A DNA stretch of 64,000 nucleotides from Dendrobates tinctorius (lineage: Eukaryota): assembly GCF_039654945.1 (NCBI RefSeq), contig NW_027361991.1, positions 186,001-250,000 on the forward strand. Reading direction: 5' to 3'. The position numbers were made by a program, and so were the translations under genes. Position 1 is the first letter of the stretch. Each line of letters opens with the position of its first letter. Shown piece after piece: positions 21,964 through 60,900 of this stretch. Under the pieces are notes generated by a model. That model did no database searches. It saw only the letters and a list, made by a program, of their open reading frames with translations, and was not told the DNA's origin.

Positions 21964-24900
21964 ATTCTACAACAACACAAACATATCGAGAAAATACAGG
22001 AAGCACAGCAGGAGATTCTGTGCTACCAGAGCCAACAACATCCTCAGTACTAGAAATTTCAACGGACACAAATCCAGTATCCTACAGAACAACAGACAAG
22101 AATACGACGGTGCCAAAAGTATCTACATCAGAGACATCTACAATAGTTGTATCAAAAACAGAAGGATCGTCACTATCTGTAACATCAATCAAAACATCTA
22201 CAGTATCAGAAAGAACAACTGAAATAATTACAGAGACTTCTATCACAGTAGCTGAAAAAGCGGCAGAAACATCCGCATTGCCAGAAGTATCCACAGAAAC
22301 TTCTCATGTCTCTGACCTAATCACAGAAGTAAAGCATTCAGTATCGGATACTACAATAGAAGCATCTACATTATCCTCTGTACAGTCAAGAAGTTCTCCA
22401 GTGTCTGCTGTACAAACGAAAGAAACATCAGTGGTGCCAGATTCCACAGCGGCAGAGACAAGTCCAGTGGTGGAAGAAAATACAGAAACCTCCTCATTAC
22501 CACAAGTATCCACAGAAACTTCTCCATTGTCTTACTTTACAACAATTACATCAGTGGTGCAAGAATCCACAGCTGTGGAGACTACTCCATTGGTGGAAGC
22601 AACTACAGAAACCTTGTCGTTACCAGAAGTATCCACAAAAACATCTCCATTATCTGCCCAATCTACAGAAGGAACACATTCACTATCTGATACTACATTA
22701 GGAGCATCCACATTAATCTCTGTACAGTCAGGAAGTTCTCCAGTGCCTGCTGTCCAAACGGAAGAAACATCAGTGGTGCCAGATTCCACAGCTGCAGAGA
22801 CAACTACCGTTGTGGAAGAACCTACAGAAACCTCTCCATTACCACACATATCCACAGAAACATCTCCATTGTCTTACTTTACAACGATTACATCAGTGGT
22901 GCCAGAATCCACAGCTGTGGAGACAACTACAGTGATGCAAACAACTACTGAAACCTCCTCACTTCCAGAAGTGTCCACTAGAGCATCTCCAATATCACTA
23001 CCAGAAGGGACATCGGTGGTTTCAGGCTCCACAGCAGCAGAGTCAACTCCAGGAGGAAAAACAACTACAAAAACTGCATCATTACCAGAGGCACCCACAG
23101 AAACCTCTCCAGTGACTGATGTAACAATAACAGGGACATCAGTAGTGCCAGGTTCCATAGACACGGAGACATCTTCAGTGGTTGAAACAACTGCAGAATC
23201 CTCAATGCCAGGAGTATCCACTGAAAGTTCTCCAGTATCTGATCTATCCACAAAAGGAACAAATACAGTACCTAATACTACTATAGGAGATTCACCTTCA
23301 TTACCGTCTGTAACTTCTGTAACTTCTCCTATATCTGAAGTACAAACAGAAGGAACATCAGTGGCACCAGATTCCACAGCTGTGGAGACAACTACAGTGA
23401 TGCAAACAACTACTGAAACCTTCTCACTACCTGAAGTGTCCACAAGAACATCTCCAATATCTGACCAATCTACAGAAAGAACACATTCACAACCAGATAC
23501 CACAATAGAAGCATTTTCAATATCTTCTGTACAGTCAGAGACTTCTATAGTTTCTACATTACTACCAGAAGGAACATCGGTGGTGCCAGGCTCCACAGCA
23601 TTAGAGACAGCTCCAGTAGTAGAAACAAATACAGAAACCTCATCGTTACCAGGAGGACCCACAGAAACTTCGCCAGTGTCTGATATACCAACAAAAGGGA
23701 CATCAGTGGTGCAAGGTTCCACAGACACAGAGACATCTTCAGTGGTTGAAACAACTGCAGAATCCTCATTGCCAGGAGTATCCACTGAAAGTTCTCCAGT
23801 ATCTGATCTGTCCACAAAAGGAACTCATACAGTACCTGATACTACTATAGCAGATTCACCTTCATCACCGTCTGTAACTTCAGTAACTTCTCCTATGTCT
23901 GAAGTACAAACAGAAGGAACATCAGTGGTACCAGATTCCACAGCTGTGGAGACAACTACAGTGATGCAAACAACTACTGAAACCTCCTCACTACCAGAAT
24001 TGTCCACAAGAACATCTCCAATATCTGACCAATCAACAGAAAGAACACATTCACTACCAGATACCACAATAGAAGCATTTTCATTATCTTCTGTACAGTC
24101 AGAGACTTCTATAGTTTCTACATTACTACCAGAAGGAACATCGGTGGTGCCAGGCTCCACAGCATTAGAGACAGCTCCAGTAGTAGAAACAACTACAGAA
24201 AACTCATCGTTACCAGGAGGACCCACAGAAACTTCACCAGTGTCTGATATAACAACAAAAGGGACATCAGTGGTGCAAGGTTCCACAGACATGGAGACAT
24301 CTTCAGTGGTTGAAACAACTGCAGAATCCTCATTGCCAGGAGTATCCACTGAAAGTTCTCCAGTATCTGGTCTGTCCACAAAAGGAACTCATACAGTACC
24401 TGATACTACTATAGCAGATTCACCTTCATCACCGTCTGTAACTTCAGTAACTTCTCCTATGTCTGAAGTACAAACAGAAGGAACATCAGTGGTACCAGAT
24501 TCCACAGCTGTGGAGACAACTACAGTGATGCAAACAACTACTGAAACCTCCTCACTACCAGAAGTGTCCACAAGAACATCTCCAATATCTGACCAATCTA
24601 CAGAAAGAACACATTCACTACCAGATACCACAACAGAAGCATTTTCAATATCTTCTGTACAGTCAGAGATTTCTATAGTTTCTACATTACTAAAAGAAGG
24701 AACATCGGTGGTGCCAGGCTCCACAGCAGTAGAGACATCTCCAGTAGTAGAAACAACTACAGAAACCTCATCGTTAGCAGGAGGACCCACAGAAACTTCT
24801 CCAGTGTCTGATATGACAACAAAAGGGACATCAGTGGTGCAAGGTTCCACAGACATGGAGACATCTTCAGTGGTTGAAACAACTGCAGAATCCTCATTGC

Positions 24901-27900
24901 CAGGAGTATCCACTGAAAGTTCTCCAGTATCTGATCTGTCCACAAAAGGAACTCATACAGTTCCTGATACTACAACAGATTCACCTTCATCACCGTCTGT
25001 AACTTCAGTAACTTCTCCTATGTCTGAAGTACAAACAGAAGGAACATCAGTGGTTCCCGATTCCACAGCTGTGGAGACAACTACAGTGATGCAAACAACT
25101 ACTGAAACCTCCTCACTACCAGAAGTGTCCACAAGAACATCTCCAATATCTGACCAATCTATAGAAAGAACACATTCACTACCAGATACCACAACAGAAG
25201 CATTTTCAATATCTTCTGTACAGTCAGAGACTTCTATAGTTTCTACATTACTAAAAGAAGGAACATCGGTGGTGCCAGGCTCCACAGCAGTAGAGACATC
25301 TCCAGTAGTAGAAACAACTACAGAAACCTCATCGTTAGCAGGAGGACCCACAGAAACTTCTCCAGTGTCTGATATGACAACAAAAGGGACATCAGTGGTG
25401 CAAGGTTCCACAGACACGGGGACATCTTCAGTGGTTGAAACAACTGCAGACTCCTCATTGCCAGGAGTATCCACTGAAAGTTCTCCAGTATCTGATCTGT
25501 CCACAACAGGAACTCATACAGTTCCTGATACTACTATAACAGATACACCTTCATCACCGTCTGTAACTTCAGTAACTTCTCCTATGTCTGAAGTACAAAC
25601 AGAAGGAACATCAGTGGTACCAGATTCCACAGCTGTGGAGACAACTACAGTGATGCAAACAACTACTGAAACCTCCTCACTACTAGAAGTGTCCACAAGA
25701 ACATCTCCAATATCTGACCAATCTACAGAAAGAACACATTCACTACCAGATACCACAATAGAAGCATTTTCGTTATCTTCTGTACAGTCAGAGACTTCTA
25801 CAGTTTCTACATTACTGCCAGAAGGAACATCGGTGGTGCCAGGCTCCACAGCAGTAGAGACAGATCCAGTAGTAGAAACAACTACAGAAACCTCATCGTT
25901 ACCAGGAGGACCCACAGAAACTTCACCAGTGTCTGATATACCAACAAAAGGGACATCAGTGGTGCAAGGTTCCACAGACACGGAGACATCTTCAGTGGTT
26001 GAAACAACTGCAGAATCCTCATTGCCAGGAGTATCCACTGAAAGTTCTCCAGTATCTGATATGTCCACAAAAGGAACTCATACAGTACCTGATACTACTA
26101 TAGCAGATTCACCTTCATCACCGTCTGTAACTTCAGTAACTTCTCCTATGTCTGAAGTACAAACAGAAGGAACATCAGTGGTACCAGATTCCACAGCTGT
26201 GGAGACAACTACAGTGATGCAAACAACTACTGAAACCTACTCACTACCAGAAGTGTCCATAAGAACATCTCCAATATCTGACCAGTCTACAGAAAGAACA
26301 CATTCACTACCAGATACCACAATAGAAGCATTTTTGTTATCTTCTGTTCAGTCAGAGACTTCTACAGTTTCTACATTACTGCCAGAAGGAACATCGGTGG
26401 TGCCAAGCTCCACAGCAGTGGAGACAGCTCCAGTTGTAGAAACAACTACAGAAACCTCATCGTTACCAGGAGAATTCACAGAAACTTCTCCAGTGTCTGG
26501 TATAACAACAAAAGGGACATCAGTGGTGCAAGGTTCCACAGACACAGAGACATCTTCAGTGGTTGAAACAACTGCAGAATCCTCATTGCCAGGAGTATCC
26601 ACTGAAAGTTCTCCAGTATCTGATCTGTCCACAAAAGGAACTCATACAGTTCCTGATACTACTATAACAGATTCACCTTCATCACCGTCTGTAACTTCAG
26701 TAACTTCTCCTATGTCTGAAGTACAAACAGAAGGAACATCAGTGGTACCAGATTCCACAGCTGTGGAGACAACTACAGTGATGCAAACAACTACTGAAAC
26801 CTACTCACTACCAGAAGTGTCCACAAGAACATCTCCAATATCTGACCAATCAACAGAAAGAACACAATCACTACCAGATACCACAATAGAAGCATTTTCA
26901 TTATCTTCTGTACAGTCAGAGACTTCTATAGTTTCTACATTACTACCAGAAGGAACATCGGTGGTGCCAGGCTCCACAGTATTAGAGACAGCTCCAGTAG
27001 TAGAAACAACTACAGAAACCTCATCGTTACCAGGAGGACCCACAGAAACTTCACCAGTGTCTGATATAACAACAAAAGGGACATCAGTGGTGCAAGGTTC
27101 CACAGACATGGAGACATCTTCAGTGGTTGAAACAACTGCAGAATCCTCATTGCCAGGAGTATCCACTGAAAGTTCTCCAGTATCTGGTCTGTCCACAAAA
27201 GGAACTCATACAGTACCTGATACTACTATAGCAGATTCACCTTCATCGCCGTCTGTAACTTCAGTAACTTCTCCTATGTCTGAAGTACAAACAGAAGGAA
27301 CATCAGTGGTACCAGATTCCACAGCTGTGAAGACAACTACAGTGATGCAAACAACTACTGAAACCTCCTCACTACCAGAAGTGTCCACAAGAACATCTCC
27401 AATATCTGACCAATCAACAGAAAGAACACATTCACTACCAGATACCACAATAGAAGCATTTTCTTTATCTTCTGTACAGTCAGAGACTTCTATAGTTTCT
27501 ACATTACTACCAGAAGGAACATCGGTGGTGCCAGGCTCCACAGCATTAGAGACAGCTCCAGTAGTAGAAACAACTACAGAAACCTCATCGTTACCAGGAG
27601 GACCCACAGAAACTTCACCAGTGTCTGATATAACAACAAAAGGGACATCAGTGGTGCAAGGTTCCACAGACATGGAGACATCTTCAGTGGTTGAAACAAC
27701 TGCAGAATCCTCATTGCCAGGAGTATCCACTGAAAGTTCTCCAGTATCTGTTCTGTCCACAAAAGGAACTCATACAGTACCTGATACTACTATAGCAGAT
27801 TCACCTTCATCACCGTCTGTAACTTCAGTAACTTCTCCTATGTCTGAAGTACTAACAGAAGGAACATCAGTGGTACCAGATTCCACAGCTGTGGAGACAA

Positions 27901-30900
27901 CTACAGTGATGCAAACAACTACTGAAACCTCCTCACTACCAGAAGTGTCCGCAAGAACATCTCCAATATCTGACCAATCTATAGAAAGAACACATTCACT
28001 ACCAGATACCACAACACAAGCATTTTCAATATCTTCTGCACAGTCAGAGACTTCTATAGTTTCCACATTACTAAAAGAAGGAACATCGGTGGTGCCAGGC
28101 TCCACAGCAGTAGAGACATCTCCAGTAGTAGAAACAACTACAGAAACCTCATCGTTAGCAGGAGGACCCACAGAAACTTCTCCAGTGTCTGATATGACAA
28201 CAAAAGGGACATCAGTGGTGCAAGGTTCCACAGACACGGGGACATCTTCAGTGGTTGAAACAACTGCAGAATCCTCATTGCCAGGAGTATCCACTGAAAG
28301 TTCTCCAGTATCTGATCTGTCCACAACAGGAACTCATACAGTTCCTGATACTACTATAACAGATACACCTTCATCACCGTCTGTAACTTCAGTAACTTCT
28401 CCTATGTCTGAAGTACAAACAGAAGGAACATCAGTGGTACCAGATTCCACAGCTGTGGAGACAACTACAGTGATGCAAACAACTACTGAAACCTCCTCAC
28501 TACTAGAAGTGTCCACAAGAACATCTCCAATATCTGACCAATCTACAGAAAGAACACATTCACTACCAGATACCACAATAGAAGCATTTTCATTATCTTC
28601 TGTACAGTCAGAGACTTCTACAGTTTCTACATTACTGCCAGAAGGAACATCGGTGGTGCCAGGCTCCACAGCAGTAGAGACAGATCCAGTAGTAGAAACA
28701 ACTACAGAAACCTCATCGTTACCAGGAGGACCCACAGAAACTTCACCAGTGTCTGATATACCAACAAAAGGGACATCAGTGGTGCTAGGTTCCACAGACA
28801 CGGAGACATCTTCAGTGGTTGAAACAACTGCAGAATCCTCATTGCCAGGAGTATCCACTGAAAGTTCTCCAGTATCTGATCTGTCCACAAAAGGAACTCA
28901 TACAGTACCTGATACTACTATAGCAGATTCACCTTCATCACCGTCTGTAACTTCAGTAACTTCTCCTATGTCTGAAGTACAAACAGAAGGAACATCAGTG
29001 GTACCAGATTCCACAGCTGTGGAGACAACTACAGTGATGCAAACAACTACTGAAACCTACTCACTACCAGAAGTGTCCATAAGAACATCTCCAATATCTG
29101 ACCAGTCTACAGAAAGAACACATTCACTACCAGATACCACAATAGAAGCATTTTCGTTATCTTCTGTTCAGTCAGAGACTTCTACAGTTTCTACATTACT
29201 GCCAGAAGGAACATCGGTGGTGCCAAGCTCCACAGCAGTGGAGACAGCTCCAGTTGTAGAAACAACTACAGAAACCTCATCGTTACCAGGAGAATTCACA
29301 GAAACTTCTCCAGTGTCTGGTATAACAACAAAAGGGACATCAGTGGTGCAAGGTTCCACAGACACAGAGACATCTTCAGTGGTTGAAACAACTGCAGAAT
29401 CCTCATTGCCAGGAGTATCCACTGAAAGTTCTCCAGTATCTGATCTGTCCACAAAAGGAACTCATACAGTTCCTGATACTACTATAACAGATTCACCTTC
29501 ATCACCGTCTGTAACTTCAGTAACTTCTCCTATGTCTGAAGTACAAACAGAAGGAACATCAGTGGTACCAGATTCCACAGCTGTGGAGACAACTACAGTG
29601 ATGCAAACAACTACTGAAACCTACTCACTACCAGAAGTGTCCACAAGAACATCTCCAATATCTGACCAATCAACAGAAAGAACACAATCACTACCAGATA
29701 CCACAATAGAAGCATTTTCATTATCTTCTGTACAGTCAGAGACTTCTATAGTTTCTACATTACTACCAGAAGGAACATCGGTGGTGCCAGGCTCCACAGT
29801 ATTAGAGACAGCTCCAGTAGTAGAAACAACTACAGAAACCTCATCGTTACCAGGAGGACCCACAGAAACTTCACCAGTGTCTGATATAACAACAAAAGGG
29901 ACATCAGTGGTGCAAGGTTCCACAGACATGGAGACATCTTCAGTGGTTGAAACAACTGCAGAATCCTCATTGCCAGGAGTATCCACTGAAAGTTCTCCAG
30001 TATCTGGTCTGTCCACAAAAGGAACTCATACAGTACCTGATACTACTATAGCAGATTCACCTTCATCGCCGTCTGTAACTTCAGTAACTTCTCCTATGTC
30101 TGAAGTACAAACAGAAGGAACATCAGTGGTACCAGATTCCACAGCTGTGAAGACAACTACAGTGATGCAAACAACTACTGAAACCTCCTCACTACCAGAA
30201 GTGTCCACAAGAACATCTCCAATATCTGACCAATCAACAGAAAGAACACATTCACTACCAGATACCACAATAGAAGCATTTTCTTTATCTTCTGTACAGT
30301 CAGAGACTTCTATAGTTTCTACATTACTACCAGAAGGAACATCGGTGGTGCCAGGCTCCACAGCATTAGAGACAGCTCCAGTAGTAGAAACAACTACAGA
30401 AACCTCATCGTTACCAGGAGGACCCACAGAAACTTCACCAGTGTCTGATATAACAACAAAAGGGACATCAGTGGTGCAAGGTTCCACAGACATGGAGACA
30501 TCTTCAGTGGTTGAAACAACTGCAGAATCCTCATTGCCAGGAGTATCCACTGAAAGTTCTCCAGTATCTGTTCTGTCCACAAAAGGAACTCATACAGTAC
30601 CTGATACTACTATAGCAGATTCACCTTCATCACCGTCTGTAACTTCAGTAACTTCTCCTATGTCTGAAGTACTAACAGAAGGAACATCAGTGGTACCAGA
30701 TTCCACAGCTGTGGAGACAACTACAGTGATGCAAACAACTACTGAAACCTCCTCACTACCAGAAGTGTCCGCAAGAACATCTCCAATATCTGACCAATAT
30801 ATAGAAAGAACACATTCACTACCAGATACCACAACACAAGCATTTTCAATATCTTCTGCACAGTCAGAGACTTCTATAGTTTCCACATTACTAAAAGAAG

Positions 30901-33900
30901 GAACATCGGTGGTGCCAGGCTCCACAGCAGTAGAGACATCTCCAGTAGTAGAAACAACTACAGAAACCTCATCGTTAGCAGGAGGACCCACAGAAACTTC
31001 TCCAGTGTCTGATATGACAACAAAAGGGACATCAGTGGTGCAAGGTTCCACAGACACGGGGACATCTTCAGTGGTTGAAACAACTGCAGAATCCTCATTG
31101 CCAGGAGTATCCACTGAAAGTTCTCCAGTATCTGATCTGTCCACAACAGGAACTCATACAGTTCCTGATACTACTATAACAGATACACCTTCATCACCGT
31201 CTGTAACTTCAGTAACTTCTCCTATGTCTGAAGTACAAACAGAAGGAACATCAGTGGTACCAGATTCCACAGCTGTGGAGACAACTACAGTGATGCAAAC
31301 AACTACTGAAACCTCCTCACTACTAGAAGTGTCCACAAGAACATCTCCAATATCTGACCAATCTACAGAAAGAACACATTCACTACCAGATACCACAATA
31401 GAAGCATTTTCATTATCTTCTGTACAGTCAGAGACTTCTACAGTTTCTACATTACTGCCAGAAGGAACATCGGTGGTGCCAGGCTCCACAGCAGTAGAGA
31501 CAGATCCAGTAGTAGAAACAACTACAGAAACCTCATCGTTACCAGGAGGACCCACAGAAACTTCACCAGTGTCTGATATACCAACAAAAGGGACATCAGT
31601 GGTGCTAGGTTCCACAGACACGGAGACATCTTCAGTGGTTGAAACAACTGCAGAATCCTCATTGCCAGGAGTATCCACTGAAAGTTCTCCAGTATCTGAT
31701 CTGTCCACAAAAGGAACTCATACAGTACCTGATACTACTATAGCAGATTCACCTTCATCACCGTCTGTAACTTCAGTAACTTCTCCTATGTCTGAAGTAC
31801 AAACAGAAGGAACATCAGTGGTACCAGATTCCACAGCTGTGGAGACAACTACAGTGATGCAAACAACTACTGAAACCTACTCACTACCAGAAGTGTCCAT
31901 AAGAACATCTCCAATATCTGACCAGTCTACAGAAAGAACACATTCACTACCAGATACCACAATAGAAGCATTTTCGTTATCTTCTGTTCAGTCAGAGACT
32001 TCTACAGTTTCTACATTACTGCCAGAAGGAACATCGGTGGTGCCAAGCTCCACAGCAGTGGAGACAGCTCCAGTTGTAGAAACAACTACAGAAACCTCAT
32101 CGTTACCAGGAGAATTCACAGAAACTTCTCCAGTGTCTGGTATAACAACAAAAGGGACATCAGTGGTGCAAGGTTCCACAGACACAGAGACATCTTCAGT
32201 GGTTGAAACAACTGCAGAATCCTCATTGCCAGGAGTATCCACTGAAAGTTCTCCAGTATCTGATCTGTCCACAAAAGGAACTCATACAGTTCCTGATACT
32301 ACTATAACAGATTCACCTTCATCACCGTCTGTAACTTCAGTAACTTCTCCTATGTCTGAAGTACAAACAGAAGGAACATCAGTGGTACCAGATTCCACAG
32401 CTGTGGAGACAACTACAGTGATGCAAACAACTACTGAAACCTACTCACTACCAGAAGTGTCCACAAGAACATCTCCAATATCTGACCAATCAACAGAAAG
32501 AACACAATCACTACCAGATACCACAATAGAAGCATTTTCATTATCTTCTGTACAGTCAGAGACTTCTATAGTTTCTACATTACTACCAGAAGGAACATCG
32601 GTGGTGCCAGGCTCCACAGTATTAGAGACAGCTCCAGTAGTAGAAACAACTACAGAAACCTCATCGTTACCAGGAGGACCCACAGAAACTTCACCAGTGT
32701 CTGATATAACAACAAAAGGGACATCAGTGGTGCAAGGTTCCACAGACATGGAGACATCTTCAGTGGTTGAAACAACTGCAGAATCCTCATTGCCAGGAGT
32801 ATCCACTGAAAGTTCTCCAGTATCTGGTCTGTCCACAAAAGGAACTCATACAGTACCTGATACTACTATAGCAGATTCACCTTCATCGCCGTCTGTAACT
32901 TCAGTAACTTCTCCTATGTCTGAAGTACAAACAGAAGGAACATCAGTGGTACCAGATTCCACAGCTGTGAAGACAACTACAGTGATGCAAACAACTACTG
33001 AAACCTCCTCACTACCAGAAGTGTCCACAAGAACATCTCCAATATCTGACCAATCTACAGAAAGAACACATTCACTACCAGATACCACAACAGAAGCATT
33101 TTCAATATCTTCTGTACAGTCAGAGACTTCTATAGTTTCTACATTACTAAAAGAAGGAACATCGGTGGTGCCAGGCTCCACAGCAGTAGAGACATCTCCA
33201 GTAGTAGAAACAACTACAGAAACCTCATCATTAGCAGGAGGACCCACAGAAACTTCTCCAGTGTCTGATATGACAACAAAAGGGACATCAGTGGTGCAAG
33301 GTTCCACAGACACGGGGACATCTTCAGTGGTTGAAACAACTGCAGAATCCTCATTGCCAGGAGTATCCACTGAAAGTTCTCCAGTATCTGATCTGTCCAC
33401 AAAAGGAACTCATACAGTTCCTGATACTACTATAACAGATTCATCTTCATCACCGTCTGTAACTTCAGTAACTTCTCCTATGTCTGAAGTACAAACAGAA
33501 GGAACATCAGTGGTTCCCGATTCCACAGCTGTGGAGACAACTACAGTGATGCAAACAACTACTGAAACCTCCTCACTACTAGAAGTGTCCACAAGAACAT
33601 CTCCAATATCTGACCAATCTACAGAAAGAACACATTCACTACCCGATACCACAATAGAAGCATTTTCGTTATCTTCTGTACAGTCAGCGACTTCTACAGT
33701 TTCTACATTACTACCAGAAGGAACATCGGTGGTGCCAGGCTCCACAGCAGTAGAGACAGCTCCAGTAGTAGAAACAACTACAGAAACCTCATCATTACCA
33801 GGAGTACCCACAGAAACTTCACCAGTGTCTGATATACCAACAAAAGGGACATCAGTGGTGCAAGGTTCCACAGACACGGAGACATCTTTAGTGGTTGAAA

Positions 33901-36900
33901 CAACTGCAGAAACCTCATTGCCAGGAGTATCCACTGAAAGTTCTCCAGTATCTGATCTGTCCACAAAAGGAACTCATACAGTACCTGATACTACAATAGC
34001 AGATTCACCTTTATCACCGTCTGTAACTTCAGTAACTTCTCCTATGTCTGAAGTACAAACAGAAGGAACATCAGTGATACCAGATTCCACAGCTGTGGAG
34101 ACAACTACAGTGATGCAAACAACTACTGAAACCTACTCACTACCAGAAGTGTCCACAAGAACATCTCCAATATCTGACCAATCAACAGAAAGAACACATT
34201 CACTACCAGATACCACAATAGAAGCATTTTCTTTATCTTCTGTACAGTCAGAGACTTCTATAGTTTCTACATTACTACCAGAAGGAACATCGGTGGTGCC
34301 AGGCTCCACAGCATTAGAGACAGCTCCAGTAGTAGAAACAACTACAGAAACCTCATCGTTACCAGGAGGACCCACAGAAACTTCACCAGTGTCTGATATA
34401 ACAACAAAAGGGACATCAGTGGTGCAAGGTTCCACAGACATGGAGACATCTTCAGTGGTTGAAACAACTGCAGAATCCTCATTGCCAGGAGTATCCACTG
34501 AAAGTTCTCCAGTATCTGTTCTGTCCACAAAAGGAACTCATACATTACCTGATACTACTATAGCAGATTCACCTTCATCACCGTCTGTAACTTCAGTAAC
34601 TTCTCCTATGTCTGAAGTACTAACAGAAGGAACATCAGTGGTACCAGATTCCACAGCTGTGGAGACAACTACAGTGATGCAAACAACTACTGAAACCTCC
34701 TCACTACCAGAAGTGTCCACAAGAACATCTCCAATATCTGACCAATCTATAGAAAGAACACATTCACTACCAGATACCACAACACAAGCATTTTCAATAT
34801 CTTCTGCACAGTCAGAGACTTCTATAGTTTCCACATTACTAAAAGAAGGAACATCGGTGGTGCCAGGCTCCACAGCAGTAGAGACATCTCCAGTAGTAGA
34901 AACAACTACAGAAACCTCATCGTTAGCAGGAGGACCCACAGAAACTTCTCCAGTGTCTGATATGACAACAAAAGGGACATCAGTGGTGCAAGGTTCCACA
35001 GACACGGGGACATCTTCAGTGGTTGAAACAACTGCAGAATCCTCATTGCCAGGAGTATCCACTGAAATTTCTCCAGTATCTGATCTGTCCACAAAAGGAA
35101 CTCATACAGTTCCTGATACTACTATAACAGATTCACCTTCATCACCGTCTGTAACTTCAGTAACTTCTCCTATGTCTGAAGTACAAACAGAAGGAACATC
35201 AGTGGTTCCCGATTCCACAGCTGTGGAGACAACTACAGTGATGCAAACAACTACTGAAACCTCCTCACTACTAGAAGTGTCTACAAGAACATCTCCAATA
35301 TCTGACCAATCTACAGAAAGAACACATTCACTGCCAGATACCACAAGAGAAGTATCTTCGTTATCTTCTGTACAGTCAGCGACTTCTACAGTTTCTACAT
35401 TACTACCAGAAGGAACATCGGTGGTGCCAGGCTCCACAGCAGTAGAGACAGCTCCAGTAGTAGAAACAACTACAGAAACCTCATCGTTACCAGGAGGACC
35501 CACAGAAACTTCACCAGTGTCTGATATACCAACAAAAGGGACATCAGTGGTGCAAGGTTCCACAGACACCGAGACATCTTCAGTGGTTGAAACAACTGCA
35601 GAATCCTCATTGCCAGGAGTATCCACTGAAAGTTCTCCAGTATCTGATCTGTCCACAACAGGAACTCATACAGTTCCTGATACTACTATAGCAGATTCAC
35701 CTTCATCACCATCTGTAACTTCAGTAACTTCTCCTATGTCTGAAGTACAAACAGAAGGAACATCAGTGGTACCAGATTCCACAGCTGTGGAGACAACTAC
35801 AGTGATGCAAACAACTACTGAAACCTACTCACTACCAGAAGTGTCCATAAGAACATCTCCAATATCTGACCAGTCTACAGAAAGAACACATTCACTACCA
35901 GATACCACAATAGAAGCATTTTCATTATCTTCTGTACAGTCAGAGACTTCTATAGTTTCTACATTACTACCAGAAGGAACATCGGTGGTGCCAGGCTCCA
36001 CAGCAGAAGAGACAGCTCCAGTAGTAGAAACAACTACAGAAACCTCAACATTACCTGAGGGACCCACAGAATCTTCTCCAGTGTCTGATATAACAACAAA
36101 AGGGACATCAGTGGTTCAAGGTTCCACAGACACGGAGACATCTTCAGTGGTTGAAACAACTGCAGAATCCTCATTGCCAGGAGTATCCACTGAATGTTCT
36201 CCAGTATCTGATCTGTCCACAAAAGGAACTCATACATTTCCTGATACGACTATAGCAGATTCACCTTCAACACCGTCTGTAACTTCAGTACGTTCTCCTA
36301 TGTCTGAAGTAGAAACAGAAGAAACATCAGTGGTACCAGATTCCACAACTGTGGAGAAAACTACAGTGATGCAAACAACTAATGAAACCTCCTCACTACC
36401 AGAAGTGTCCACAAAAACATCTCCAATATCTGACCAATCTACAGAAAGAACACATTCACTACCAGATACCACAATAGAAGCATTTTCATTATCTTCTGTA
36501 CAGTCAGAGACTTCTATGGTTTCTACATTACTACCAGAAGGAACATCGGTGGTGCCAGGCTCCACAGCAGTAGAGACAGCTCCAGTAGTAGAAACAACTA
36601 CAGAAACCTCATCGTTACCAGGAAGACCCACAGAAACTTCTCCAGTGTCTGATAAAGCAACAAAAGGGACATCAGTGGTGCAAGGTTCCACAGACATGGA
36701 GACATCTTCAGTGGTTGAAACAACTGCAGAATCCTCATTGCCAGGAGTATTCACTGAAAGTTCTCCAGTATCTGATCTGTCCACAAAAGGAACTCATAGA
36801 GTACCTGATACTACTATAGCAGATTCACCTGCATCACCGTCTGTAACTTCAGTAACTTCTCCTATGTCTGAAGTACAAACAGAAGGAACATCAGTGGTAC

Positions 36901-51900: not shown

Positions 51901-54900
51901 CAGTGGTGCAAGGTTCCACAGACACGGAGACATCTTCAGTGGTTGAAACAACTGCAGAATCCTCATCGCCAGGAGTATCCACTGAAAGTTCTCTAGTATC
52001 TGATCTGTCCACAAAAGGAACTCATACAGATCCCGATACTACTATAGCAGATTCACCTTCATCACCGTCTGTAACTTCAGTAAGTTCTCCTATGTCTGAA
52101 TTACAAACAGAAGGAACATCAGTGGTACCAGATTCCAAAACTGTGGAGACAACTACAGTGATGCAAACAGCTACTGAAACCTCCTCACTACCAGACGTGT
52201 CCACAAGAACATCTCCAATATCTGACCAATCTACAGAAAGAACACATTCACTACCAGATACCACAATAGAAGCATTATCATTATCTTCTGTACAGTCAGA
52301 GACTTCCATAGTTTCTACATTACTAACAGAAGGAACATCGGTGGTGCCAGGCTCCACAGCAGTAGAGACAGCTCCAGTAGTAGAAACAACTACAGAAACC
52401 TCATCGTTACCAGGAGGACCCACAGAAACTTCTTCAGTGTCTGATATAACAACAAAAGGGACATCAGTGGTGCAAGGTTCCACAGACACGGAGACATCTT
52501 CAGTGGTTGAAACAACTGCAGAATCCTCATTGCCAGGAGTATTCACTGAAAGTTCTCCAGTATCTGATCTGTCCACAAAAGGAACTCATAGAGTACCTGA
52601 TACTACTATAGCAGATTCACCTGCATCACCGTCTGTAACTTCAGTAACTTCTCCTATGTCTGAAGTACAAACAGAAGGAACATCAGTGGTACCAGATTCC
52701 ACAGCTGTGGAGACAACTACAGTAATGCAAACAACTACTGAAACCTCCTCACTACCAGAAGTGTCCACAAGAACATCTCCAATATCTGTCCAATCTACAG
52801 AAAGAACACATTCACTACCAGATACCACAACAGAAGCATTTTCAATATCTTCTGTACAGTCAGAGTCTTCTATAGTTTCTACATTACTACCAGAAGGAAC
52901 ATCGGTGGTGCCAGGCTCCACAGCAGTAGAGACAGCTCCAGTAGTAGAAACAACTACAGAAACCTCATCGTTAGCAGGAGGACCCACAGAAACTTCTCCA
53001 GTGTCTGATATAACAACAAAAGGGACATCAGTGGTGCAAGGTTCCACAGACACGGAGACATCTTCAGTGGTTGAAACAACTGCAGAATCCTCATTGCCAG
53101 GAGTATCCACTGAAAGTTCTCCAGTATCTGATCTGTCCACAAAAGGAACTCATACAGATCCTGATACTACTATAGCAGATTCACCTTCATCACCGTCTGT
53201 AACTTCAGTAAGTTCTCCTATGTCTGAACTACAATCAGAAGGAACATCAGTAGTATCAGATTCCAAAACTGTGGAGACAACTACAGTGATGCAAACAGCT
53301 ACTGAAACCTCCTCACTACCAGACGTGTCCACAAGAACATCTCCAATATCTGACCAATCTACAGAAAGAACACATTCACTAACAGATACCACAATAGAAG
53401 CATTATCATTATCTTCTGTACAGTCAGAGACTTCTATAGTTTCTACATTACTAGCAGAAGGAACATCGGAGGTGCCAGGCTCCACAGCAGTAGAGACAGC
53501 TCCAGTAGTAGAAACAACTACAGAAACCTCATCGTTACCAGGAGGACCCACAGAAACTTCTCCAGTGTCTGATATAACAACAAAAGGGACATCAGTGGTG
53601 CAAGGTTCCACAGACACGGAGACATCTTCAGTGGTTGAAACAACTGCAGAATCCTCATTGCCAGGAGTATCCACTGAAAGTTCTCCAGTATCTGATCTGT
53701 CCACAAAAGGAACTCATACAGTTCCTGATACTACTATAACAGATTCACCTTCATCACCGTCTGTAACTTCAGTAACTTCTCCTATGTCTGAAGTACAAAC
53801 AGAAGGAACATCAGTGGTACCAGATTCCACAGCTGTGGAGACAACTACAGTGATGCAAACAACTACTGAAACCTCCTCACTACTAGAAGTGTCCACAAGA
53901 ACATCTCCAATATCTGACCAATCTACAGAAAGAACACATTGTCTACCAGATACCACAATAGAAGCATTTTCATTATCTTCTGTACAGTCAGAGACTTCTA
54001 CAGTTTCTACATTACTACCAGAAGGAACATCGGTGGTGCCAGGCTCCACAGCAGTAGAGACAGCTCCATTAGTAGAAACAACTACAGAAACCTCATCGTT
54101 ACCAGGAGAACTCACAGAAACTTCTCCAGTGTCTGGTATAACAACAAAAGGGACATCAGTGGTGCAAGGTTCCACAGACACGGAGACATCTTCAGTGGTT
54201 GAAACAACTGCAGAATCCTCATCGCCAGGAGTATCCACTGAAAGTTCTCTAGTATCTGATCTGTCCACAAAAGGAACTCATACAGATCCCGATACTACTA
54301 TAGCAGATTCACCTTCATCACCGTCTGTAACTTCAGTAAGTTCTCCTATGTCTGAATTACAAACAGAAGGAACATCAGTGGTACCAGATTCCAAAACTGT
54401 GGAGACAACTACAGTGATGCAAACAGCTACTGAAACCTCCTCACTACCAGACGTGTCCACAAGAACATCTCCAATATCTGACCAATCTACAGAAAGAACA
54501 CATTCACTACCAGATACCACAATAGAAGCATTATCATTATCTTCTGTACAGTCAGAGACTTCCATAGTTTCTACATTACTAACAGAAGGAACATCGGTGG
54601 TGCCAGGCTCCACAGCAGTAGAGACAGCTCCAGTAGTAGAAACAACTACAGAAACCTCATCGTTACCAGGAGGACCCACAGAAACTTCTTCAGTGTCTGA
54701 TATAACAACAAAAGGGACATCAGTGGTGCAAGATTCCACAGACACGGAGACATCTTCAGTGGTTGAAACAACTGCAGAATCCTCATTGCCAGGAGTATCC
54801 ACTGAAAGTTCTCCAGTATCTGATCTGTCCACAAAAGGAACTCATACAGTTCCTGATACTACTATAACAGATTCTCCTTCATCACCGTCTGTAACTTCAG

Positions 54901-57900
54901 TAACTTCTCCTATGTCTGAAGTACAAACAGAAGGAACATCAGTGGTACCAGATTCCACAGCTGTGGAGACAACTACAGTGATGCAAACAACTACTGAAAC
55001 CTACTCACTACCAGAAGTGTCCACAAGAACATCTCCAATATCTGACCAATCAACAGAAAGAACACAATCACTACCAGATACCACAATAGAAGCATTTTCA
55101 TTATCTTCTGTACAGTCGGAGACTTCTATATTTTCTACATTACTACCAGAAGGAACATCGGTGGTGCCAGGCTCCACAGTATTAGAGACAGCTCCAGTAG
55201 TAGAAACAACTACAGAAACCTCATCGTTACCAGGAGGACCCACAGAAACTTCACCAGTGTCTGATATAACAACAAAAGGGACATCAGTGGTGCAAGGTTC
55301 CACAGACATGGAGACATCTTCAGTGGTTGAAACAACTGCAGAATCCTCATTGCCAGGAGTATCCACTGAAAGTTCTCCAGTGTCTGGTCTGTCCACAAAA
55401 GTAACTCATACAGTACCTGATACTACTATAGCAGATTCACCTTCATCGCCGTCTGTAAATTCACTAACTTCTCCTATGTCTGAAGTACAAACAGAAGGAA
55501 CATCAGTGGTACCAGATTCCACAGCTGTGAAGACAACTACAGTGATGCAAACAACTACTGAAACCTCCTCACTACCAGAAGTGTCCACAAGAACATCTCC
55601 AATATCTGACCAATCTACAGAAAGAACACATTCACTTCCAGATACCACAACAGAAGCATTTTCAATATCTTCTGTACAGTCAGAGACTTCTATAGTTTCT
55701 ACATTACTAAAAGAAGGAACATCGGTGGTGCCAGGCTCCACAGCAGTAGAGACATCTCCAGTAGTAGAAACAACTACAGAAACCTCATCGTTAGCAGGAG
55801 GACCCACAGAAACTTCTCCAGTGTCTGATATTACAACAAAAGTGACATCAGTGTTGCAAGGTTCCACAGACACGGGGACATCTTCAGTGGTTGAAACAAC
55901 TGCAGAATCCTCATTGCCAGGAGTATCCACTGAAAGTTCTCCGGTATCTGATCTGTCCACAAAAGGAACTAATACAGTTCCTGATACTACTATAACAGAT
56001 TCATCTTCATCACCGTCTGTAACTTCAGTAACTTCTCCTATGTCTGAAGTACAAACAGAAGGAACATCAGTGGTTCCCGATTCCACAGCTGTGGAGACAA
56101 CTACAGTGATGCAAACAACTACTGAAACCTCCTCACTACTAGAAGTGTCCACAAAAACATCTCCAATATCTGACCAATCTACAGAAAGAACACATTCACT
56201 ACCAGATACCACAATAGAAGCATTTTCGTTATCTTCTGTACAGTCAGCGACTTCTACAGTTTCTACATTACTACCAGAAGGAACATCGGTGGTGCCAGGC
56301 TCCACAGCAGTAGAGACAGCTCCAGTAGTAGAAACAACTACAGAAACCTCATCATTATCAGGAGTACCCACAGAAACTTCACCAGTGTCTGATATACCAA
56401 CAAAAGTGACATCAGTGGAGCAAGGTTCCACAGACACGGAGACATCTTCAGTGGTTGAAACAACTGCAGAAACCTCATTGCCAGGAGTATCCACTGAAAG
56501 TTCTCCAGTATCTGATCTGTCCACAAAAGGAACTCATACAGTACCTGATACTACAATAGCAGATTCACCTTCATCACCGTCTGTAACTTCAGTAAGTTCT
56601 CCTATGTCTGAACTACAATCAGAAGGAACATCAGTGGTATCAGATTCCAAAACTGTGGAGACAACTACAGTGATGCAAACAGCTACTGAAACCTCCTCAC
56701 TACCAGACGTGTCCACAAGAACATCTCCAATATCTGACCAATCTACAGAAAGAACACATTCACTAACAGATACCACAATAGAAGCATTATCATTATCTTC
56801 TGTACAGTCAGAGACTTCTATAATTTATACATTACTAGCAGAAGGAACATCGGTGGTGCCAGGCTCCACAGCAGTAGAGACAGCTCCAGTAGTAGAAACA
56901 ACTACAGAAACCTCATCGTTACCAGGAGGACCCACAGAAACTTCTCCAGTGTCTGATATAACAACAAAAGGGACATCAGTGGTGCAAGGTTCCACAGACA
57001 CGGAGACAACTTCAGTGGTTGAAACAACTGCAGAATCCTCATTGCCAGGAGTATCCACTGAAAGTTCTCCAGTATCTGATCTGTCCACAAAAGGAACTCA
57101 TACAGTTCCTGATACTACTATAACAGATTCACCTTCATCACCGTCTGTAACTTCAGTAACTTCTCCTATGTCTGAAGTACAAACAGAAGGAACATCAGTG
57201 GTACCAGATTCCACAGCTGTGGAGACAACTACAGTGATGCAAACAACTACTGAAACCTCCTCACTACTAGAAGTGTCCACAAGAACATCTCCAATATCTG
57301 ACCAATCTACAGAAAGAACACATTCTCTACCAGATAACACAATAGAAGCATTTTCATTATCTTCTGTACAGTCAGAGACTTCTACAGTTTCTACATTACT
57401 ACCAGAAGGAACATCGGTGGTGCCAGGCTCCACAGCAGTGGAGACAGCTCCAGTAGTAGAAACAACTACAGAAACCTCATCGTTACCAGGAGGACCCACA
57501 GAAACTTCACCAGTGTCTGAAATAACAACAAAAGGGACATCAGTGGTGCAAGGTTCCACAGACATGGAGACATCTTCAGTGGTTGAAACAACTGCAGAAT
57601 CCTCATTGCCAGGAGTATCCACTGAAAGTTCTCCAGTATCTGTTCTGTCCACAAAAGGAACTCATACAGTACCTGATACTACTATAGCAGATTCACCTTC
57701 ATCACCGTCTGTAACTTCAGTAACTTCTCCTATGTCTGAAGTACTAACAGAAGGAACATCAGTGGTACCAGATTCCACAGCTGTGGAGACAACTACAGTG
57801 ATGCAAACAACTACTGAAACCTCCTCACTACCAGAAGTGTCCACAAGAACATCTCCAATATCTGACCAATCTACAGAAAGAACACATTCACTACCAGATA

Positions 57901-60900
57901 CCACAACAGAAGCATTTTCTATATCTTCTGCACAGTCAGAGACTTCTATTGTTTCTACATTACTAAAAGAAGGAACATCGGTGGTGCCAGGCTCCACAGC
58001 AGTAGAGACATCTCCAGTAGTAGAAACAACTACAGAAACCTCATCGTTAGCAGGAGGACCCACAGAAACTTCTCCAGTGTCTGATATTTCAACAAAAGTG
58101 ACATCAGTGGTGCAAGGTTCCACAGACACGGGGACATCTTCAGTGGTTGAAACAACTGCAGAATCCTCATTGCCAGGAGTATCCACTGAAAGTTCTCCGG
58201 TATCTGATCTGTCCACAAAAGGAACTAATACAGTTCCTGATACTACTATAACAGATTCATCTTCATCACCGTCTGTAACTTCAGTAACTTCTCCTATGTC
58301 TGAAGTACAAACAGAAGGAACATCAGTGGTTCCCGATTCCACAGCTGTGGAGACAACTACAGTGATGCAAACAACTACTGAAACCTCCTCACTACTAGAA
58401 GTGTCCACAAAAACATCTCCAATATCTGACCAATCTACAGAAAGAACACATTCACTACCAGATACCACAATAGAAGCATTTTCGTTATCTTCTGTACAGT
58501 CAGCGACTTCTACAGTTTCTACATTACTACCAGAAGGAACATCGGTGGTGCCAGGCTCCACAGCAGTAGAGACAGCTCCAGTAGTAGAAACAACTACAGA
58601 AACCTCATCATTATCAGGAGTACCCACAGAAACTTCACCAGTGTCTGATATACCAACAAAAGTGACATCAGTGGTGCAAGGTTCCACAGACACGGAGACA
58701 TCTTCAGTGGTTGAAACAACTGCAGAAACCTCATTGCCAGGAGTATCCACTGAAAGTTCTCCAGTATCTGATCTGTCCACAAAAGGAACTCATACAGTAC
58801 CTGATACTACAATAGCAGATTCACCTTCATCACCGTCTGTAACTTCAGTAAGTTCTCCTATGTCTGAACTACAATCAGAAGGAACATCAGTGGTATCAGA
58901 TTCCAAAACTGTGGAGACAACTACAGTGATGCAAACAGCTACTGAAACCTCCTCACTACCAGACGTGTCCACAAGAACATCTCCAATATCTGACCAATCT
59001 ACAGAAAGAACACATTCACTAACAGATACCACAATAGAAGCATTATCATTATCTTCTGTACAGTCAGAGACTTCTATAATTTATACATTACTAGCAGAAG
59101 GAACATCGGTGGTGCCAGGCTCCACAGCAGTAGAGACAGCTCCAGTAGTAGAAACAACTACAGAAACCTCATCGTTACCAGGAGGACCCACAGAAACTTC
59201 TCCAGTGTCTGATATAACAACAAAAGGGACATCAGTGGTGCAAGGTTCCACAGACACGGAGACAACTTCAGTGGTTGAAACAACTGCAGAATCCTCATTG
59301 CCAGGAGTATCCACTGAAAGTTCTCCAGTATCTGATCTGTCCACAAAAGGAACTCATACAGTTCCTGATACTACTATAACAGATTCACCTTCATCACCGT
59401 CTGTAACTTCAGTAACTTCTCCTATGTCTGAAGTACAAACAGAAGGAACATCAGTGGTACCAGATTCCACAGCTGTGGAGACAACTACAGTGATGCAAAC
59501 AACTACTGAAACCTCCTCACTACTAGAAGTGTCCACAAGAACATCTCCAATATCTGACCAATCTACAGAAAGAACACATTCTCTACCAGATACCACAATA
59601 GAAGCATTTTCATTATCTTCTGTACAGTCAGAGACTTCTACAGTTTCTACATTACTACCAGAAGGAACATCGGTGGTGCCAGGCTCCACAGCAGTAGAGA
59701 CAGCTCCAGTAGTAGAAACAACTACAGAAACCTCATCGTTACCAGGAGGACCCACAGAAACTTCACCAGTGTCTGATATAACAACAAAAGGGACATCAGT
59801 GGTGCAAGGTTCCACAGACATGGAGACATCTTCAGTGGTTGAAACAACTGCAGAATCCTCATTGCCAGGAGTATCCACTGAAAGTTCTCCAGTATCTGTT
59901 CTGTCCACAAAAGGAACTCATACAGTACCTGATACTACTATAGCAGATTCACCTTCATCACCGTCTGTAACTTCAGTAACTTCTCCTATGTCTGAAGTAC
60001 TAACAGAAGGAACATCAGTGGTACCAGATTCCACAGCTGTGGAGACAACTACAGTGATGCAAACAACTACTGAAACCTCCTCACTACCAGAAGTGTCCAC
60101 AAGAACATCTCCAATATCTGACCAATCTACAGAAAGAACACATTCACTACCAGATACCACAACAGAAGCATTTTCTATATCTTCTGCACAGTCAGAGACT
60201 TCTATTGTTTCTACATTACTAAAAGAAGGAACATCGGTGGTGCCAGGCTCCACAGCAGTAGAGACATCTCCAGTAGTAGAAACAACTACAGAAACCTCAT
60301 CGTTAGCAGGAGGACCCACAGAAACTTCTCCAGTGTCTGATATGACAACAAATGGGACATCAGTGGTGCAAGGTTCCACAGACACGGGGACATCTTCAGT
60401 GGTTGAAACAACTGCAGAATCCTCATTGCCAGGAGTATCCACTGAAAGTTCTCCAGTATCTGATCTGTCCACAAAAGGAACTCATACAGTTCCTGATACT
60501 ACTATAACAGATTCACCTTCATCACCGTCTGTAACTTCAGTAACTTCTCCTATGTCTGAAGTACAAACAGAAGGAACATCAGTGGTTCCCGATTCCACAG
60601 CTGTGGAGACAACTACAGTGATGCAAACAACTACTGAAACCTCCTCACTACTAGAAGTGTCTACAAGAACATCTCCAATATCTGACCAATCTACAGAAAG
60701 AACACATTCACTACCAGATACCACAAGAGAAGCATTTTCGTTATCTTCTGTACAGTCAGAGACTTCTACAGTTTCTACATTACTACCAGAAGGAACATCG
60801 GTGGTGCCAGGCTCCACAGCAGTAGAGACAGCTCCAGTAGTAGAAACAACTACAGAAACCTCATCGTTACCAGGAGGACCCACAGAAACTTCACCAGTGT

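What the first reader, a model, noticed from the sequence alone, without database searches (positions are those of the whole stretch)
25514..60480. Centromere-style higher-order repeats (5-mer, 12-mer, 4-mer) inside a protein-coding exon
Seen: diagnostic unit variants recur at fixed multiples of 564 bp. Period 2820 (5 units) holds over ~25514-33050, e.g. marker variants at 26348, 29168, 31988. Period 6768 (12 units) gives three copies at ~32282-39049, 39050-45817 and 45818-52585, with markers at 35825/42593/49361 and 38147/44915/51683. Period 2256 (4 units) appears at 50330-54841 and ~55970-60480, with markers at 51683/53939 and 56534/58790. Inference: successive unequal crossovers of different block sizes, as in alpha-satellite HORs, but under a reading-frame constraint. 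This yields protein super-periods of 940, 2256 and 752 aa and predicts large allelic length polymorphism.
Basis: partly seen in the sequence, partly recalled or inferred. Interest (0 to 1): 0.8.

Follow-up and report, generated by a model that had tools for sequence, protein, structure and literature searches.

The report
Giant frog mucin exon, nested repeats
One frog mucin exon of more than 42,000 bases is built of 188-amino-acid repeats that were recently re-copied in blocks of 4, 5 and 12 repeats; this is the known way mucin genes grow, seen here unusually clearly rather than a new kind of element.

Summary
From 21964 to the window end one + strand frame is open for over 14,000 codons. It consists of 564-bp units in exact register. 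Unit-to-unit identity is about 95.6%. Blocks of 5 units (25132-33104), 12 units (32131-52594) and 4 units (50179-54850, 55676-60354) repeat at 99.6-99.8%.

It is the Ser/Thr/Pro-rich (51%) central exon of a frog mucin. RNA-like runs skip the intron, and one contig joins a signal-peptide-like upstream exon at the predicted acceptor. The only relative among 1.8 billion proteins is a Ranitomeya imitator gene. Its matching exon is about 1.2 kb and is followed by EGF-like and SEA-like exons.

The unit is itself nested: a 20-aa motif, then 42/31-aa sub-units, then 188 aa. About 58% of the array in the window is duplicate younger than 0.3% divergence. Unit variants look neutral (pN/pS about 1.2), but there are no stops or frameshifts.

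The best explanation is in-register unequal exchange spanning several units, the standard way mucin repeat arrays grow. Published comparators exist: an implicit 4-unit pattern in human MUC6 and MUC12 alleles up to 23,080 aa. I rate it a new member of a known kind. The same exon was noted elsewhere in this scan. Allelic polymorphism is untested.

The parts
1..21963 (+). 3' part of the intron upstream of the giant exon. It is filled with transposon remnants, and the signal-peptide exon is not in the window.
   Evidence: Pfam hits RVT_1, DDE_Tnp_4 and SCAN on ORFs. The 30-nt end of the upstream exon seen in RNA has no match in the window. Positions 21488-21963 are 74-81% identical to the R. imitator intron.
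21964..64000 (+). Giant mucin (PTS) coding exon. It is open from the splice acceptor to the window edge (over 14,000 codons) and runs off the window.
   Evidence: The frame is open for 14,026 codons, while the other frames have 1-19 stops per unit. The acceptor is ...cattgtcag|AT. RNA-like contigs start at 21962 and are absent from the intron. Composition is T 22.8%, S 20.7%, P 7.9%.
21964..22263 (+). Non-repeated start of the exon, orthologous to the R. imitator protein P0001.
   Evidence: phmmer E 1.1e-22 with 49% identity over residues 1-92. tblastn and blastn agree.
22264..22996 (+). Older repeats of 342 bp (2.1 copies, 84%) and 123 bp, which precede the 564-bp unit.
   Evidence: TRF.
23054..25508 (+). 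The first 564-bp units, older and 2.5-4% apart. The unit at 24948-25508 is 561 bp because of a one-codon deletion.
25132..33104 (+). 5-unit block (BCDEF, 2820 bp), 2.83 copies at 99.77%.
32131..52594 (+). 12-unit block (D GHIJKLMNOPQ, 6768 bp), 3.02 copies at 99.73-99.77%. It shares a D-centred tract of about 1 kb (32131-33104) with the 5-unit block.
50179..54850 (+). 4-unit block NOPQ (2256 bp), 2.07 copies at 99.75%. The extra copy is identical to NOPQ of 12-mer copy 2.
   Evidence: longest exact repeat 2385 bp at lag 16 units
54840..55967 (+). Units S and T, older copies (4-8 differences) of units D and G. They form an intermediate-age layer.
55676..60354 (+). Second 4-unit block (UVWX), 2.07 copies at 99.59%.
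59922..63462 (+). Weaker lag-4 similarity (12 mismatches in 1285 bp). The tail units are related to units P, Q and L of the 12-mer.

Best explanation
This is the central O-glycosylated (Ser/Thr/Pro-rich) domain of a frog mucin, encoded by a single exon of more than 42 kb. The mucin is probably a membrane mucin of the SEA/EGF type.

The exon is a tandem array with four nested levels. A motif of about 20 aa was doubled into 42-aa X and 31-aa Y sub-units. These are arranged X-Y-X-X-Y to make a 188-aa (564-bp) unit. The units were then copied in multi-unit blocks.

The array grows by misaligned but in-register exchange between units: unequal sister-chromatid or homologue crossover, or replication slippage or template switching. 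When the misalignment spans 4, 5 or 12 units, a whole block is duplicated. Because these events are young (about 0.25% divergence) compared with the units themselves (about 4.4%), they show up as higher-order periods. About 58% of the array in the window is such young duplicate, so the exon roughly doubled recently.

The frame survives because every level is a multiple of 3 bases. Selection removes only stops and frameshifts and keeps the composition; individual residues drift.

Shown here: the periods, the open frame, transcription and splicing, the orthology, and the neutral-like variant pattern. Inferred: the exchange mechanism, glycosylation, membrane anchoring and timing.
For: Periods and identities.

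Coding:
- A 14,026-codon open frame, with 1-19 stops per unit in the other frames.
- 179 distinct unit variants with 0 stops, where about 7 are expected.
- One indel in about 41 kb, and it is 3 bp.

Transcription and splicing (translation):
- Runs X5 and X6 have no depth over intron 21402-21937.
- Their contigs start at 21962.
- One 240-nt contig carries 95 upstream letters that read in frame LLLLVLPLLI|DSTTTQ.

Mucin nature: S+T+P is 51%, D+E 13%, with only 8 Cys in 14,011 aa.

Gene type: the R. imitator locus L001 has the orthologous exon start, with the conserved acceptor and intron. It is followed by an EGF-like exon with good splice sites and a SEA-like exon.

Drift: variable sites fall 49/61/49 by codon position and pN/pS is 1.18. 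The 22 sites that differ among the 12-mer copies are all substitutions, 12 of them private.

Nesting: X-X identity is 62-71%, nucleotide lag peaks are at 219 and 126, and the R. imitator 20-aa motif aligns inside X.

Copy number: reads of X1 give the collapsed unit 323x depth against 7.6x for the unique flank, a ratio of 42.5. The same 31-mers occur 34.8 times on average in the window, so the assembly is not inflated.

Literature: mucin repeat arrays evolve by slippage and unequal crossing over (PMC13345508).
Against: - No read spans a block, so the exact order of blocks rests on the assembly alone.
- X1 may be the sample the assembly was made from.
- The SEA (E 0.001) and EGF (E 0.011) matches are below the Pfam cut-offs. 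They lie in another species' locus, and the 3' end of this gene is outside the window.
- Ten of the 22 differences between 12-mer copies are shared with other units. Gene conversion therefore also acts and blurs both the history and the dating.
- The three 12-mer copies are nearly star-like (private differences 7, 4 and 1), so 'successive' events cannot be ordered.
Confidence: 0.8

Rival explanations
1. Assembly artefact: the assembler over-expanded or mis-ordered near-identical units, so the 5-, 12- and 4-unit blocks do not exist in the animal.
For: Block copies are 99.6-99.8% identical. No spanning reads could be laid, only contigs. Repeat arrays are classic trouble spots for assemblers.
Against: - The copies are not identical. 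Twenty-two substitution differences distinguish the three 12-mer copies, 12 of them private.
- The longest exact repeat anywhere in the array is 2385 bp, well inside long-read length.
- K-mer depth of the collapsed unit is 42.5 times single copy. That is at least what the window's own copy number predicts, 34.8.
- A second organism (X8) also shows unit contigs at many times single-copy depth.
Confidence: 0.08
2. The high-identity blocks come from gene conversion homogenising pre-existing distant units, not from recent duplication, so the array did not grow recently.
For: Ten of the 22 sites differing among the 12-mer copies carry a base that also occurs in other units. A D-centred tract of about 1 kb is shared by the 5-mer and 12-mer blocks.
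Against: - Conversion tracts are normally short.
- Here collinear identity runs for 13.7 kb at a single lag, with unit order preserved over 12 units in three copies.
- The R. imitator orthologous exon is only about 1.2 kb, so real growth occurred in this lineage.
Confidence: 0.07
3. Functional super-repeats: the 940-, 2256- and 752-aa super-periods are kept by selection on the protein, as in titin or nebulin super-repeats or the MUC5B super-repeat.
For: The blocks are in frame and translated. Super-repeats with function exist in other giant proteins (own knowledge; MUC5B super-repeat mentioned in papers).
Against: - Units within a block differ by only about 4%.
- Their differences are spread evenly over codon positions, with pN/pS of 1.18.
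- Three different block sizes sit side by side with only 2-3 copies each.
- There are no distinct domains such as CysD between them.
Confidence: 0.03
4. Non-coding satellite whose open frame is an accident of copying one open unit.
For: A long open frame in a young tandem array needs only one open 188-codon unit to begin with.
Against: - 179 variants without a stop, and no frameshifting indel.
- Spliced RNA evidence with a signal-peptide-like upstream exon.
- An orthologous coding exon with a conserved acceptor in R. imitator.
Confidence: 0.01

Closest known systems
Human MUC6 central exon (169-aa / 507-bp repeats)
   Same: Both are a single PTS exon of long repeat units of similar size. Published long-read data list repeat lengths 169/168/150/74 aa recurring three times (repeats 14-25), which is an implicit 4-unit higher-order pattern (PMC9712336). 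Copy number varies between people.
   Different: MUC6 is a secreted gel-forming mucin with about 27 units (13.5 kb), and the paper does not describe the pattern as higher-order. Here there are 72 or more units, three block sizes and no unit truncations.
Human MUC12 / MUC3 / MUC17 membrane mucins (SEA-EGF type)
   Same: All have a signal peptide, then one giant PTS exon, then EGF and SEA modules. MUC12 alleles range from 4,677 to 23,080 aa and hold the largest human coding exon (PMC13345508). Frogs have several SEA-type membrane mucins (PMC9578598).
   Different: There is no detectable sequence similarity in the PTS part. Membership rests on sub-threshold EGF and SEA hits in the R. imitator locus. 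Synteny and the 3' end were not seen. The repeat unit here is much longer (188 aa).
Alpha-satellite higher-order repeats of primate centromeres
   Same: Both have head-to-tail monomers of fixed length and multi-monomer blocks that are far more alike than the monomers within a block. Unequal exchange is the accepted cause (own knowledge).
   Different: Alpha satellite is non-coding, with hundreds to thousands of block copies and monomers only 50-80% alike. Here the array is coding, each block has 2-3 copies, monomers are 95.6% alike, and there is no centromere role.
NBPF / Olduvai 3-mer higher-order repeats
   Same: A higher-order tandem organisation inside protein-coding genes has been published and named as such (PMC9584774).
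   Different: NBPF units are exon-intron cassettes of about 1.6 kb that encode a folded domain. Here everything lies in one exon and encodes a disordered glycosylated region.
Chironomus Balbiani-ring genes and spider silk genes (own knowledge, not checked here)
   Same: Both are very long exons (tens of kb) made of hierarchically nested, strongly homogenised repeats that encode secreted structural proteins.
   Different: They are unrelated proteins from invertebrates, with different composition.

Membership tests
Higher-order repeat array (as defined for alpha satellite) | Head-to-tail monomers of constant length | tested here: met
   564-bp units stay in exact register from 25509 to 64000. 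Identity is 0.947 at lag 564 against 0.21 at lags 563/565.
Higher-order repeat array (as defined for alpha satellite) | Blocks of n monomers repeated in tandem, with block-to-block identity well above monomer-to-monomer identity | tested here: met
   n = 5, 12, 4 and 4. Blocks are 99.59-99.77% identical against a modal 95.6% between units. Permutation gave 22 against a maximum of 10. The contrast is much smaller than in alpha satellite.
Higher-order repeat array (as defined for alpha satellite) | One block homogenised over many (tens to thousands of) copies | tested here: not met
   There are only 2.07-3.02 copies of each block, and four different blocks lie side by side.
Higher-order repeat array (as defined for alpha satellite) | Non-coding, centromeric | tested here: not met
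   The array lies in an open, transcribed, spliced exon.
Mucin (PTS / VNTR central exon) | Long region rich in Ser, Thr and Pro, made of tandem repeats in one large exon | tested here: met
   S+T+P is 51.5% over 14,011 aa. It is one open frame with a 188-aa unit.
Mucin (PTS / VNTR central exon) | Secretory signal peptide | tested here: inconclusive
   Only the last 10 residues of the upstream exon are seen in an RNA contig: LLLLVLPLLI, hydrophobic and in frame. The exon itself is outside the window.
Mucin (PTS / VNTR central exon) | Dense O-glycosylation | not testable with these tools
   Needs glycoproteomics or lectin and density-gradient work.
SEA-type membrane mucin (MUC3/12/17, MUC13) | SEA domain after the PTS region | tested here: inconclusive
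   In the orthologous R. imitator locus, one exon (L001 24869-24994) hits Pfam SEA at E 0.001 and 19.6 bits, below the 26.4 cut-off, covering profile positions 3-33 of 106. No GSVVV-type cleavage exon was found in the 10 kb held. There was no PDB hit.
SEA-type membrane mucin (MUC3/12/17, MUC13) | EGF-like module between PTS and SEA | tested here: inconclusive
   L001 22120-22224 has AG/GT borders in phase 1 and reads CLNG..C.C...F.G..C. The EGF_2 hit is E 0.011, below the cut-off.
SEA-type membrane mucin (MUC3/12/17, MUC13) | Transmembrane helix and cytoplasmic tail; synteny with the MUC3 cluster | not tested
   The 3' end of the gene lies beyond the window and beyond L001.

The most novel reading that the evidence does not exclude
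An untested note on the next window (s1-386214) says the frame stays open for another 26 kb or more. If so, this is a single coding exon of 66 kb or more (22,000 codons or more), among the largest known in any vertebrate. It would have grown more than 35-fold relative to the orthologous exon of another poison frog. More than half of its length would have been added in a recent burst of multi-unit duplications (about 0.25% divergence). That would make it a natural time series of how a giant mucin is built, and probably a highly length-polymorphic locus.
Probability: 0.45. Interest if true: 0.5.

Novelty: new member of a known kind. Interest (0 to 1): 0.4.

Why it matters
Mucin length sets the thickness of the sugar coat on epithelia, and mucin repeat exons are among the fastest-changing coding sequences known.

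This locus shows the whole growth history in one sequence: a 20-aa motif, then 42/31-aa sub-units, then a 188-aa unit, then 4-, 5- and 12-unit blocks. It also shows that selection polices only the frame and the composition.

It gives a clean non-human comparator for the giant human MUC12 exon. It is a test case for assemblers and gene annotators, which miss such exons: the R. imitator gene model is clearly wrong at its 5' end.

It does not reveal a new mechanism.

Tried and rejected
- Pfam on three units and on the exon start: nothing meaningful.
- ESM Atlas feature search: scores 0.81, below use.
- Word-based protein search with three units: only P0001.
- The same search with a 3000-aa frame and the exon start: only bird aggrecan chondroitin-sulphate regions, E 1e-10 to 1e-4 and 31-37% identity. 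I take these as compositional, not homology.
- Exhaustive phmmer of the exon start against 1.84 billion representatives: P0001 plus two compositional hits, an Aeromonas hypothetical protein and an unnamed ENA protein.
- PDB search with the SEA-like exon: no hit.
- Search for the upstream (signal-peptide) exon in the window and in L001: absent.
- Search for further SEA exons in L001 by the cleavage motif: none.
- Verifying block order with reads: only collapsed short contigs were available, so this was not possible.
- Ordering the two duplications that made three 12-mer copies: the data are nearly star-like, with only one clear site shared by copies 2 and 3.
Full report
**Observation**

The window has no N. 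One + strand frame is open from 21921 to the last full codon of the window (14,026 codons). No other frame has more than 548 open codons.

Identity between the sequence and itself shifted by 564 bases is 0.947, against 0.21 at 563 or 565. Register holds from about 23054 to the end. The single exception is a 3-bp, one-codon deletion near 24975.

I cut the array into 72 units. Each unit's nearest relatives lie at fixed lags:
- +-5 units for 25514-32845
- +-12 and +-24 for 32282-52585
- +-4 for 50330-54841 and for 55970-60480

These pairs differ at 0-5 of 564 positions, while ordinary pairs differ at about 24.

The maximal high-identity segments are:

| Lag (bp) | Segment | Mismatches | Identity |
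|---|---|---|---|
| 2820 | 25132-30284 | 12 | 99.77% |
| 6768 | 32131-45826 | 32 | 99.77% |
| 13536 | 32131-39054 | 19 | 99.73% |
| 2256 | 50179-52594 | 6 | 99.75% |
| 2256 | 55676-58098 | 10 | 99.59% |

With types defined by 3 or fewer differences, the array reads: A BCDEF BCDEF BCD GHIJKLMNOPQ D GHIRKLMNOPQ D GHIJKLMNOPQ NOPQ S T UVWX UVWY Z P a b Z L.

In 2000 shuffles of unit order, the largest number of near-identical pairs at any one lag was 10 (mean 4.8). The observed number is 22.

**What it is**

The open frame begins behind a good splice acceptor...cattgtcag|AT at 21963/21964, phase 1. The translated product is 22.8% Thr, 20.7% Ser, 11.9% Val, 9.0% Glu and 7.9% Pro. It has 8 Cys in 14,011 residues. 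This is a mucin-type PTS domain.

Pfam finds nothing in it. The only true relative is P0001, an unnamed protein of the poison frog Ranitomeya imitator. It was the sole hit of the word-based search. It was also the sole credible hit among 1.84 billion representatives (E 1.1e-22, 49% identity over the first 92 residues of the exon). The other two hits were compositional. Bird aggrecan hits are compositional as well.

In the R. imitator locus L001, the matching exon has the same acceptor context (PIQKYINYLF.. against PIQKHINDLF..). Its upstream intron is 74-81% identical. There the exon is only about 400 codons, with 7.3 copies of a 60-bp repeat.

Two further exons follow in L001:
- an exon with AG/GT borders in phase 1 that reads as an EGF-like module (EGF_2, E 0.011)
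- an exon that matches the start of the SEA domain (E 0.001)

Both hits are below the Pfam cut-offs, as expected for single short exons. This fits a membrane mucin of the SEA/EGF type, which frogs are reported to have in several copies (PMC9578598). It is not proven, because the 3' end of the gene is outside both the window and L001.

The first two exons of the P0001 model have several look-alikes nearby and no counterpart in the window. They are probably a mis-annotation.

**Expression**

Ten runs hold parts of the stretch. I laid four of them on 21000-24999.

The DNA run X1 covers intron and exon alike at about 7.6x. One contig (21270-22449) has no differences from the window.

The small runs X5 and X6 (48 and 67 million letters) have no depth at all over 21402-21937, and their contigs begin at 21962. 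One X6 contig of 240 letters lies on 21962-22106 and carries 95 further letters upstream that fit nothing here. Read in the exon's frame, its last 30 letters give LLLLVLPLLI followed by DSTTTQ.... That looks like the hydrophobic core of a signal peptide spliced to the giant exon.

That upstream exon is not in the window or in L001, so the intron is longer than 21.9 kb. The window's first 21.9 kb is transposon debris.

The array part is covered in X5 and X6 at many times the depth of the exon start, as expected for collapsed repeats.

**Is the copy number real?**

In X1 the collapsed 563-letter unit contig has depth 323.3 against 7.6 for the unique flank, a ratio of 42.5. The 31-mers of that contig occur 34.8 times on average in the window. 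The reads therefore support at least as many units as are assembled, and somewhat more. This fits an array that runs on beyond the window.

The tool warns that contig depth is not a copy number, and X1 may be the assembly's own sample, so this is rough support only.

The longest exact repeat in the array is 2385 bp. The three 12-unit copies differ at 22 sites, all substitutions, 12 of them private to one copy. That is what real, slightly diverged copies look like, and long accurate reads could place them. The block order itself could not be checked independently.

Run X8, from a second and closely related organism, matches the exon start at about 97% with an in-frame 18-nt insertion. It also has unit contigs at high depth.

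**Anatomy below and above the unit**

The 188-aa consensus splits into X1 (42 aa), Y1 (31), X2 (42), X3 (42) and Y2 (31). X units are 62-71% identical to each other, and Y units match at 14 of 26 positions. The nucleotide self-comparison peaks at lags 219 (X+Y) and 126 (X). The 20-aa repeat of R. imitator aligns inside each X.

Near the exon start there are older 342- and 123-bp periods.

Above the unit there are at least three age layers:
- about 4.4% between ordinary units
- about 1% (for example S, T and U against D, G and H)
- about 0.25% between block copies

The 5-unit and 12-unit blocks share a D-centred tract of about 1 kb (32131-33104). Units E and F are close to I and J, so the two blocks have common ancestry.

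The extra NOPQ is identical to NOPQ of 12-mer copy 2. This fits either duplication of four units or loss of eight units from a fourth 12-mer copy. Both are outcomes of misaligned exchange.

Sequence that is redundant at 0.4% divergence or less adds up to 23,688 of 40,947 array bases in the window, or 58%.

**Selection**

Among 49 distinct unit sequences there are 159 variable sites, spread 49/61/49 over the three codon positions. The 179 distinct variants are 45 synonymous and 134 non-synonymous, giving pN/pS of 1.18. Individual residues are therefore not conserved.

Yet none of the 179 variants makes a stop, although 4.0% of possible single changes would. About 7 stops are expected, so P is about 8e-4. 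The only indel is 3 bp.

Selection thus keeps the frame and the composition, as is usual for mucin domains. Block duplication cannot break the frame, because the unit is 188 codons.

**Mechanism**

The best-supported reading is in-register misaligned exchange between units, whether unequal crossover or replication slippage and template switching. Misalignments of 4, 5 and 12 units would leave young multi-unit duplicates.

This is the accepted way mucin repeat arrays change (PMC13345508). It is inferred here, not shown.

Gene conversion acts as well. Ten of the 22 inter-copy differences carry bases seen in other units, and there is the shared D tract. For that reason any date from 0.25% divergence is only an order of magnitude: roughly a million years at 1e-9 per site per year, which is my assumption.

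**Comparison with what is known**

- Human MUC6 has 169-aa repeats whose published lengths 169/168/150/74 recur three times. That is a 4-unit higher-order pattern, though the paper does not call it that (PMC9712336).
- Human MUC12, a SEA-type membrane mucin, has alleles from 4,677 to 23,080 aa and the largest human coding exon (PMC13345508).
- Higher-order repeats inside coding genes are published for NBPF (PMC9584774).
- A full-text search for 'higher-order repeat', mucin and tandem repeat found only two papers, neither about this. The explicit description is therefore rare, but the phenomenon is not new.
- Against alpha satellite the resemblance is formal. The defining high copy number of one homogenised block and the non-coding centromeric setting are not met.

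**Earlier notes of this scan**

- s1-381450 describes the same open exon. I confirm it.
- s1-386214 says the frame stays open for at least 26.3 kb from window position 62001. That would make the exon 66 kb or more. I could not test this.
- s1-381557 describes the foldback at 2802-6454. The mirrored satellite arrays are visible.
- s1-376875 concerns another frog mucin on other DNA.

**Verdict**

This is a real, well-resolved example of multi-level tandem-repeat growth in a giant frog mucin exon. It is a new member of a known kind. Interest is moderate.

Noticed in passing
window 2802-6454: Large foldback. A 21-bp G-rich satellite (2975-3256) and an 11-bp TACATACTACA satellite (3402-4333) are mirrored as reverse complements at 4945-5922 and 6081-6265. 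Its outer ends (2789-2937, 6344-6458) match an element in the R. imitator locus L001 at 30309-31433. Already noted in the scan as s1-381557.
   Followed up: partly
window 288-1928, 7345-7914, 17639-18412: Transposon-derived ORFs in the intron: a reverse-transcriptase fragment (RVT_1, E 2e-6), a Harbinger-type DDE nuclease (E 8e-14), and an ORF with a SCAN domain (E 7.5e-12), presumably a retroelement gag relative.
   Followed up: partly
L001 10001-18675 (R. imitator gene model P0001): The first two exons of the public gene model have several 31-42% identical look-alikes within 5 kb upstream and no counterpart in the window. The model's last exon skips the EGF-like exon. The annotation of this gene looks wrong at both ends.
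   Followed up: partly
L001 26249-26554: Interstitial telomere-like repeats in inverted orientation, CCCTAA then TTAGGG, inside an intron of the R. imitator locus.
   Followed up: no
window 22213 (run X8, organism B): A closely related organism carries an in-frame 18-nt insertion behind 22213 and 19 substitutions over 21819-22418. The unique exon start therefore also evolves fast and in frame.
   Followed up: no
window 24805 (run X5): One RNA-like contig leaves the array behind 24805 into 255 letters beginning TGGGACTACTTCAACTACAGCAGCACCACC, which reads as a Thr/Ala/Pro-rich stretch. It may be the 3' exit of the array, as in the Thr-rich tail of the R. imitator exon, or a variant unit.
   Followed up: no
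window 21000-21401: Very high-copy interspersed repeat just upstream of the conserved intron part. Word depth is 15,000-58,000 in DNA runs of both organisms, and it is also present in the RNA-like runs.
   Followed up: no
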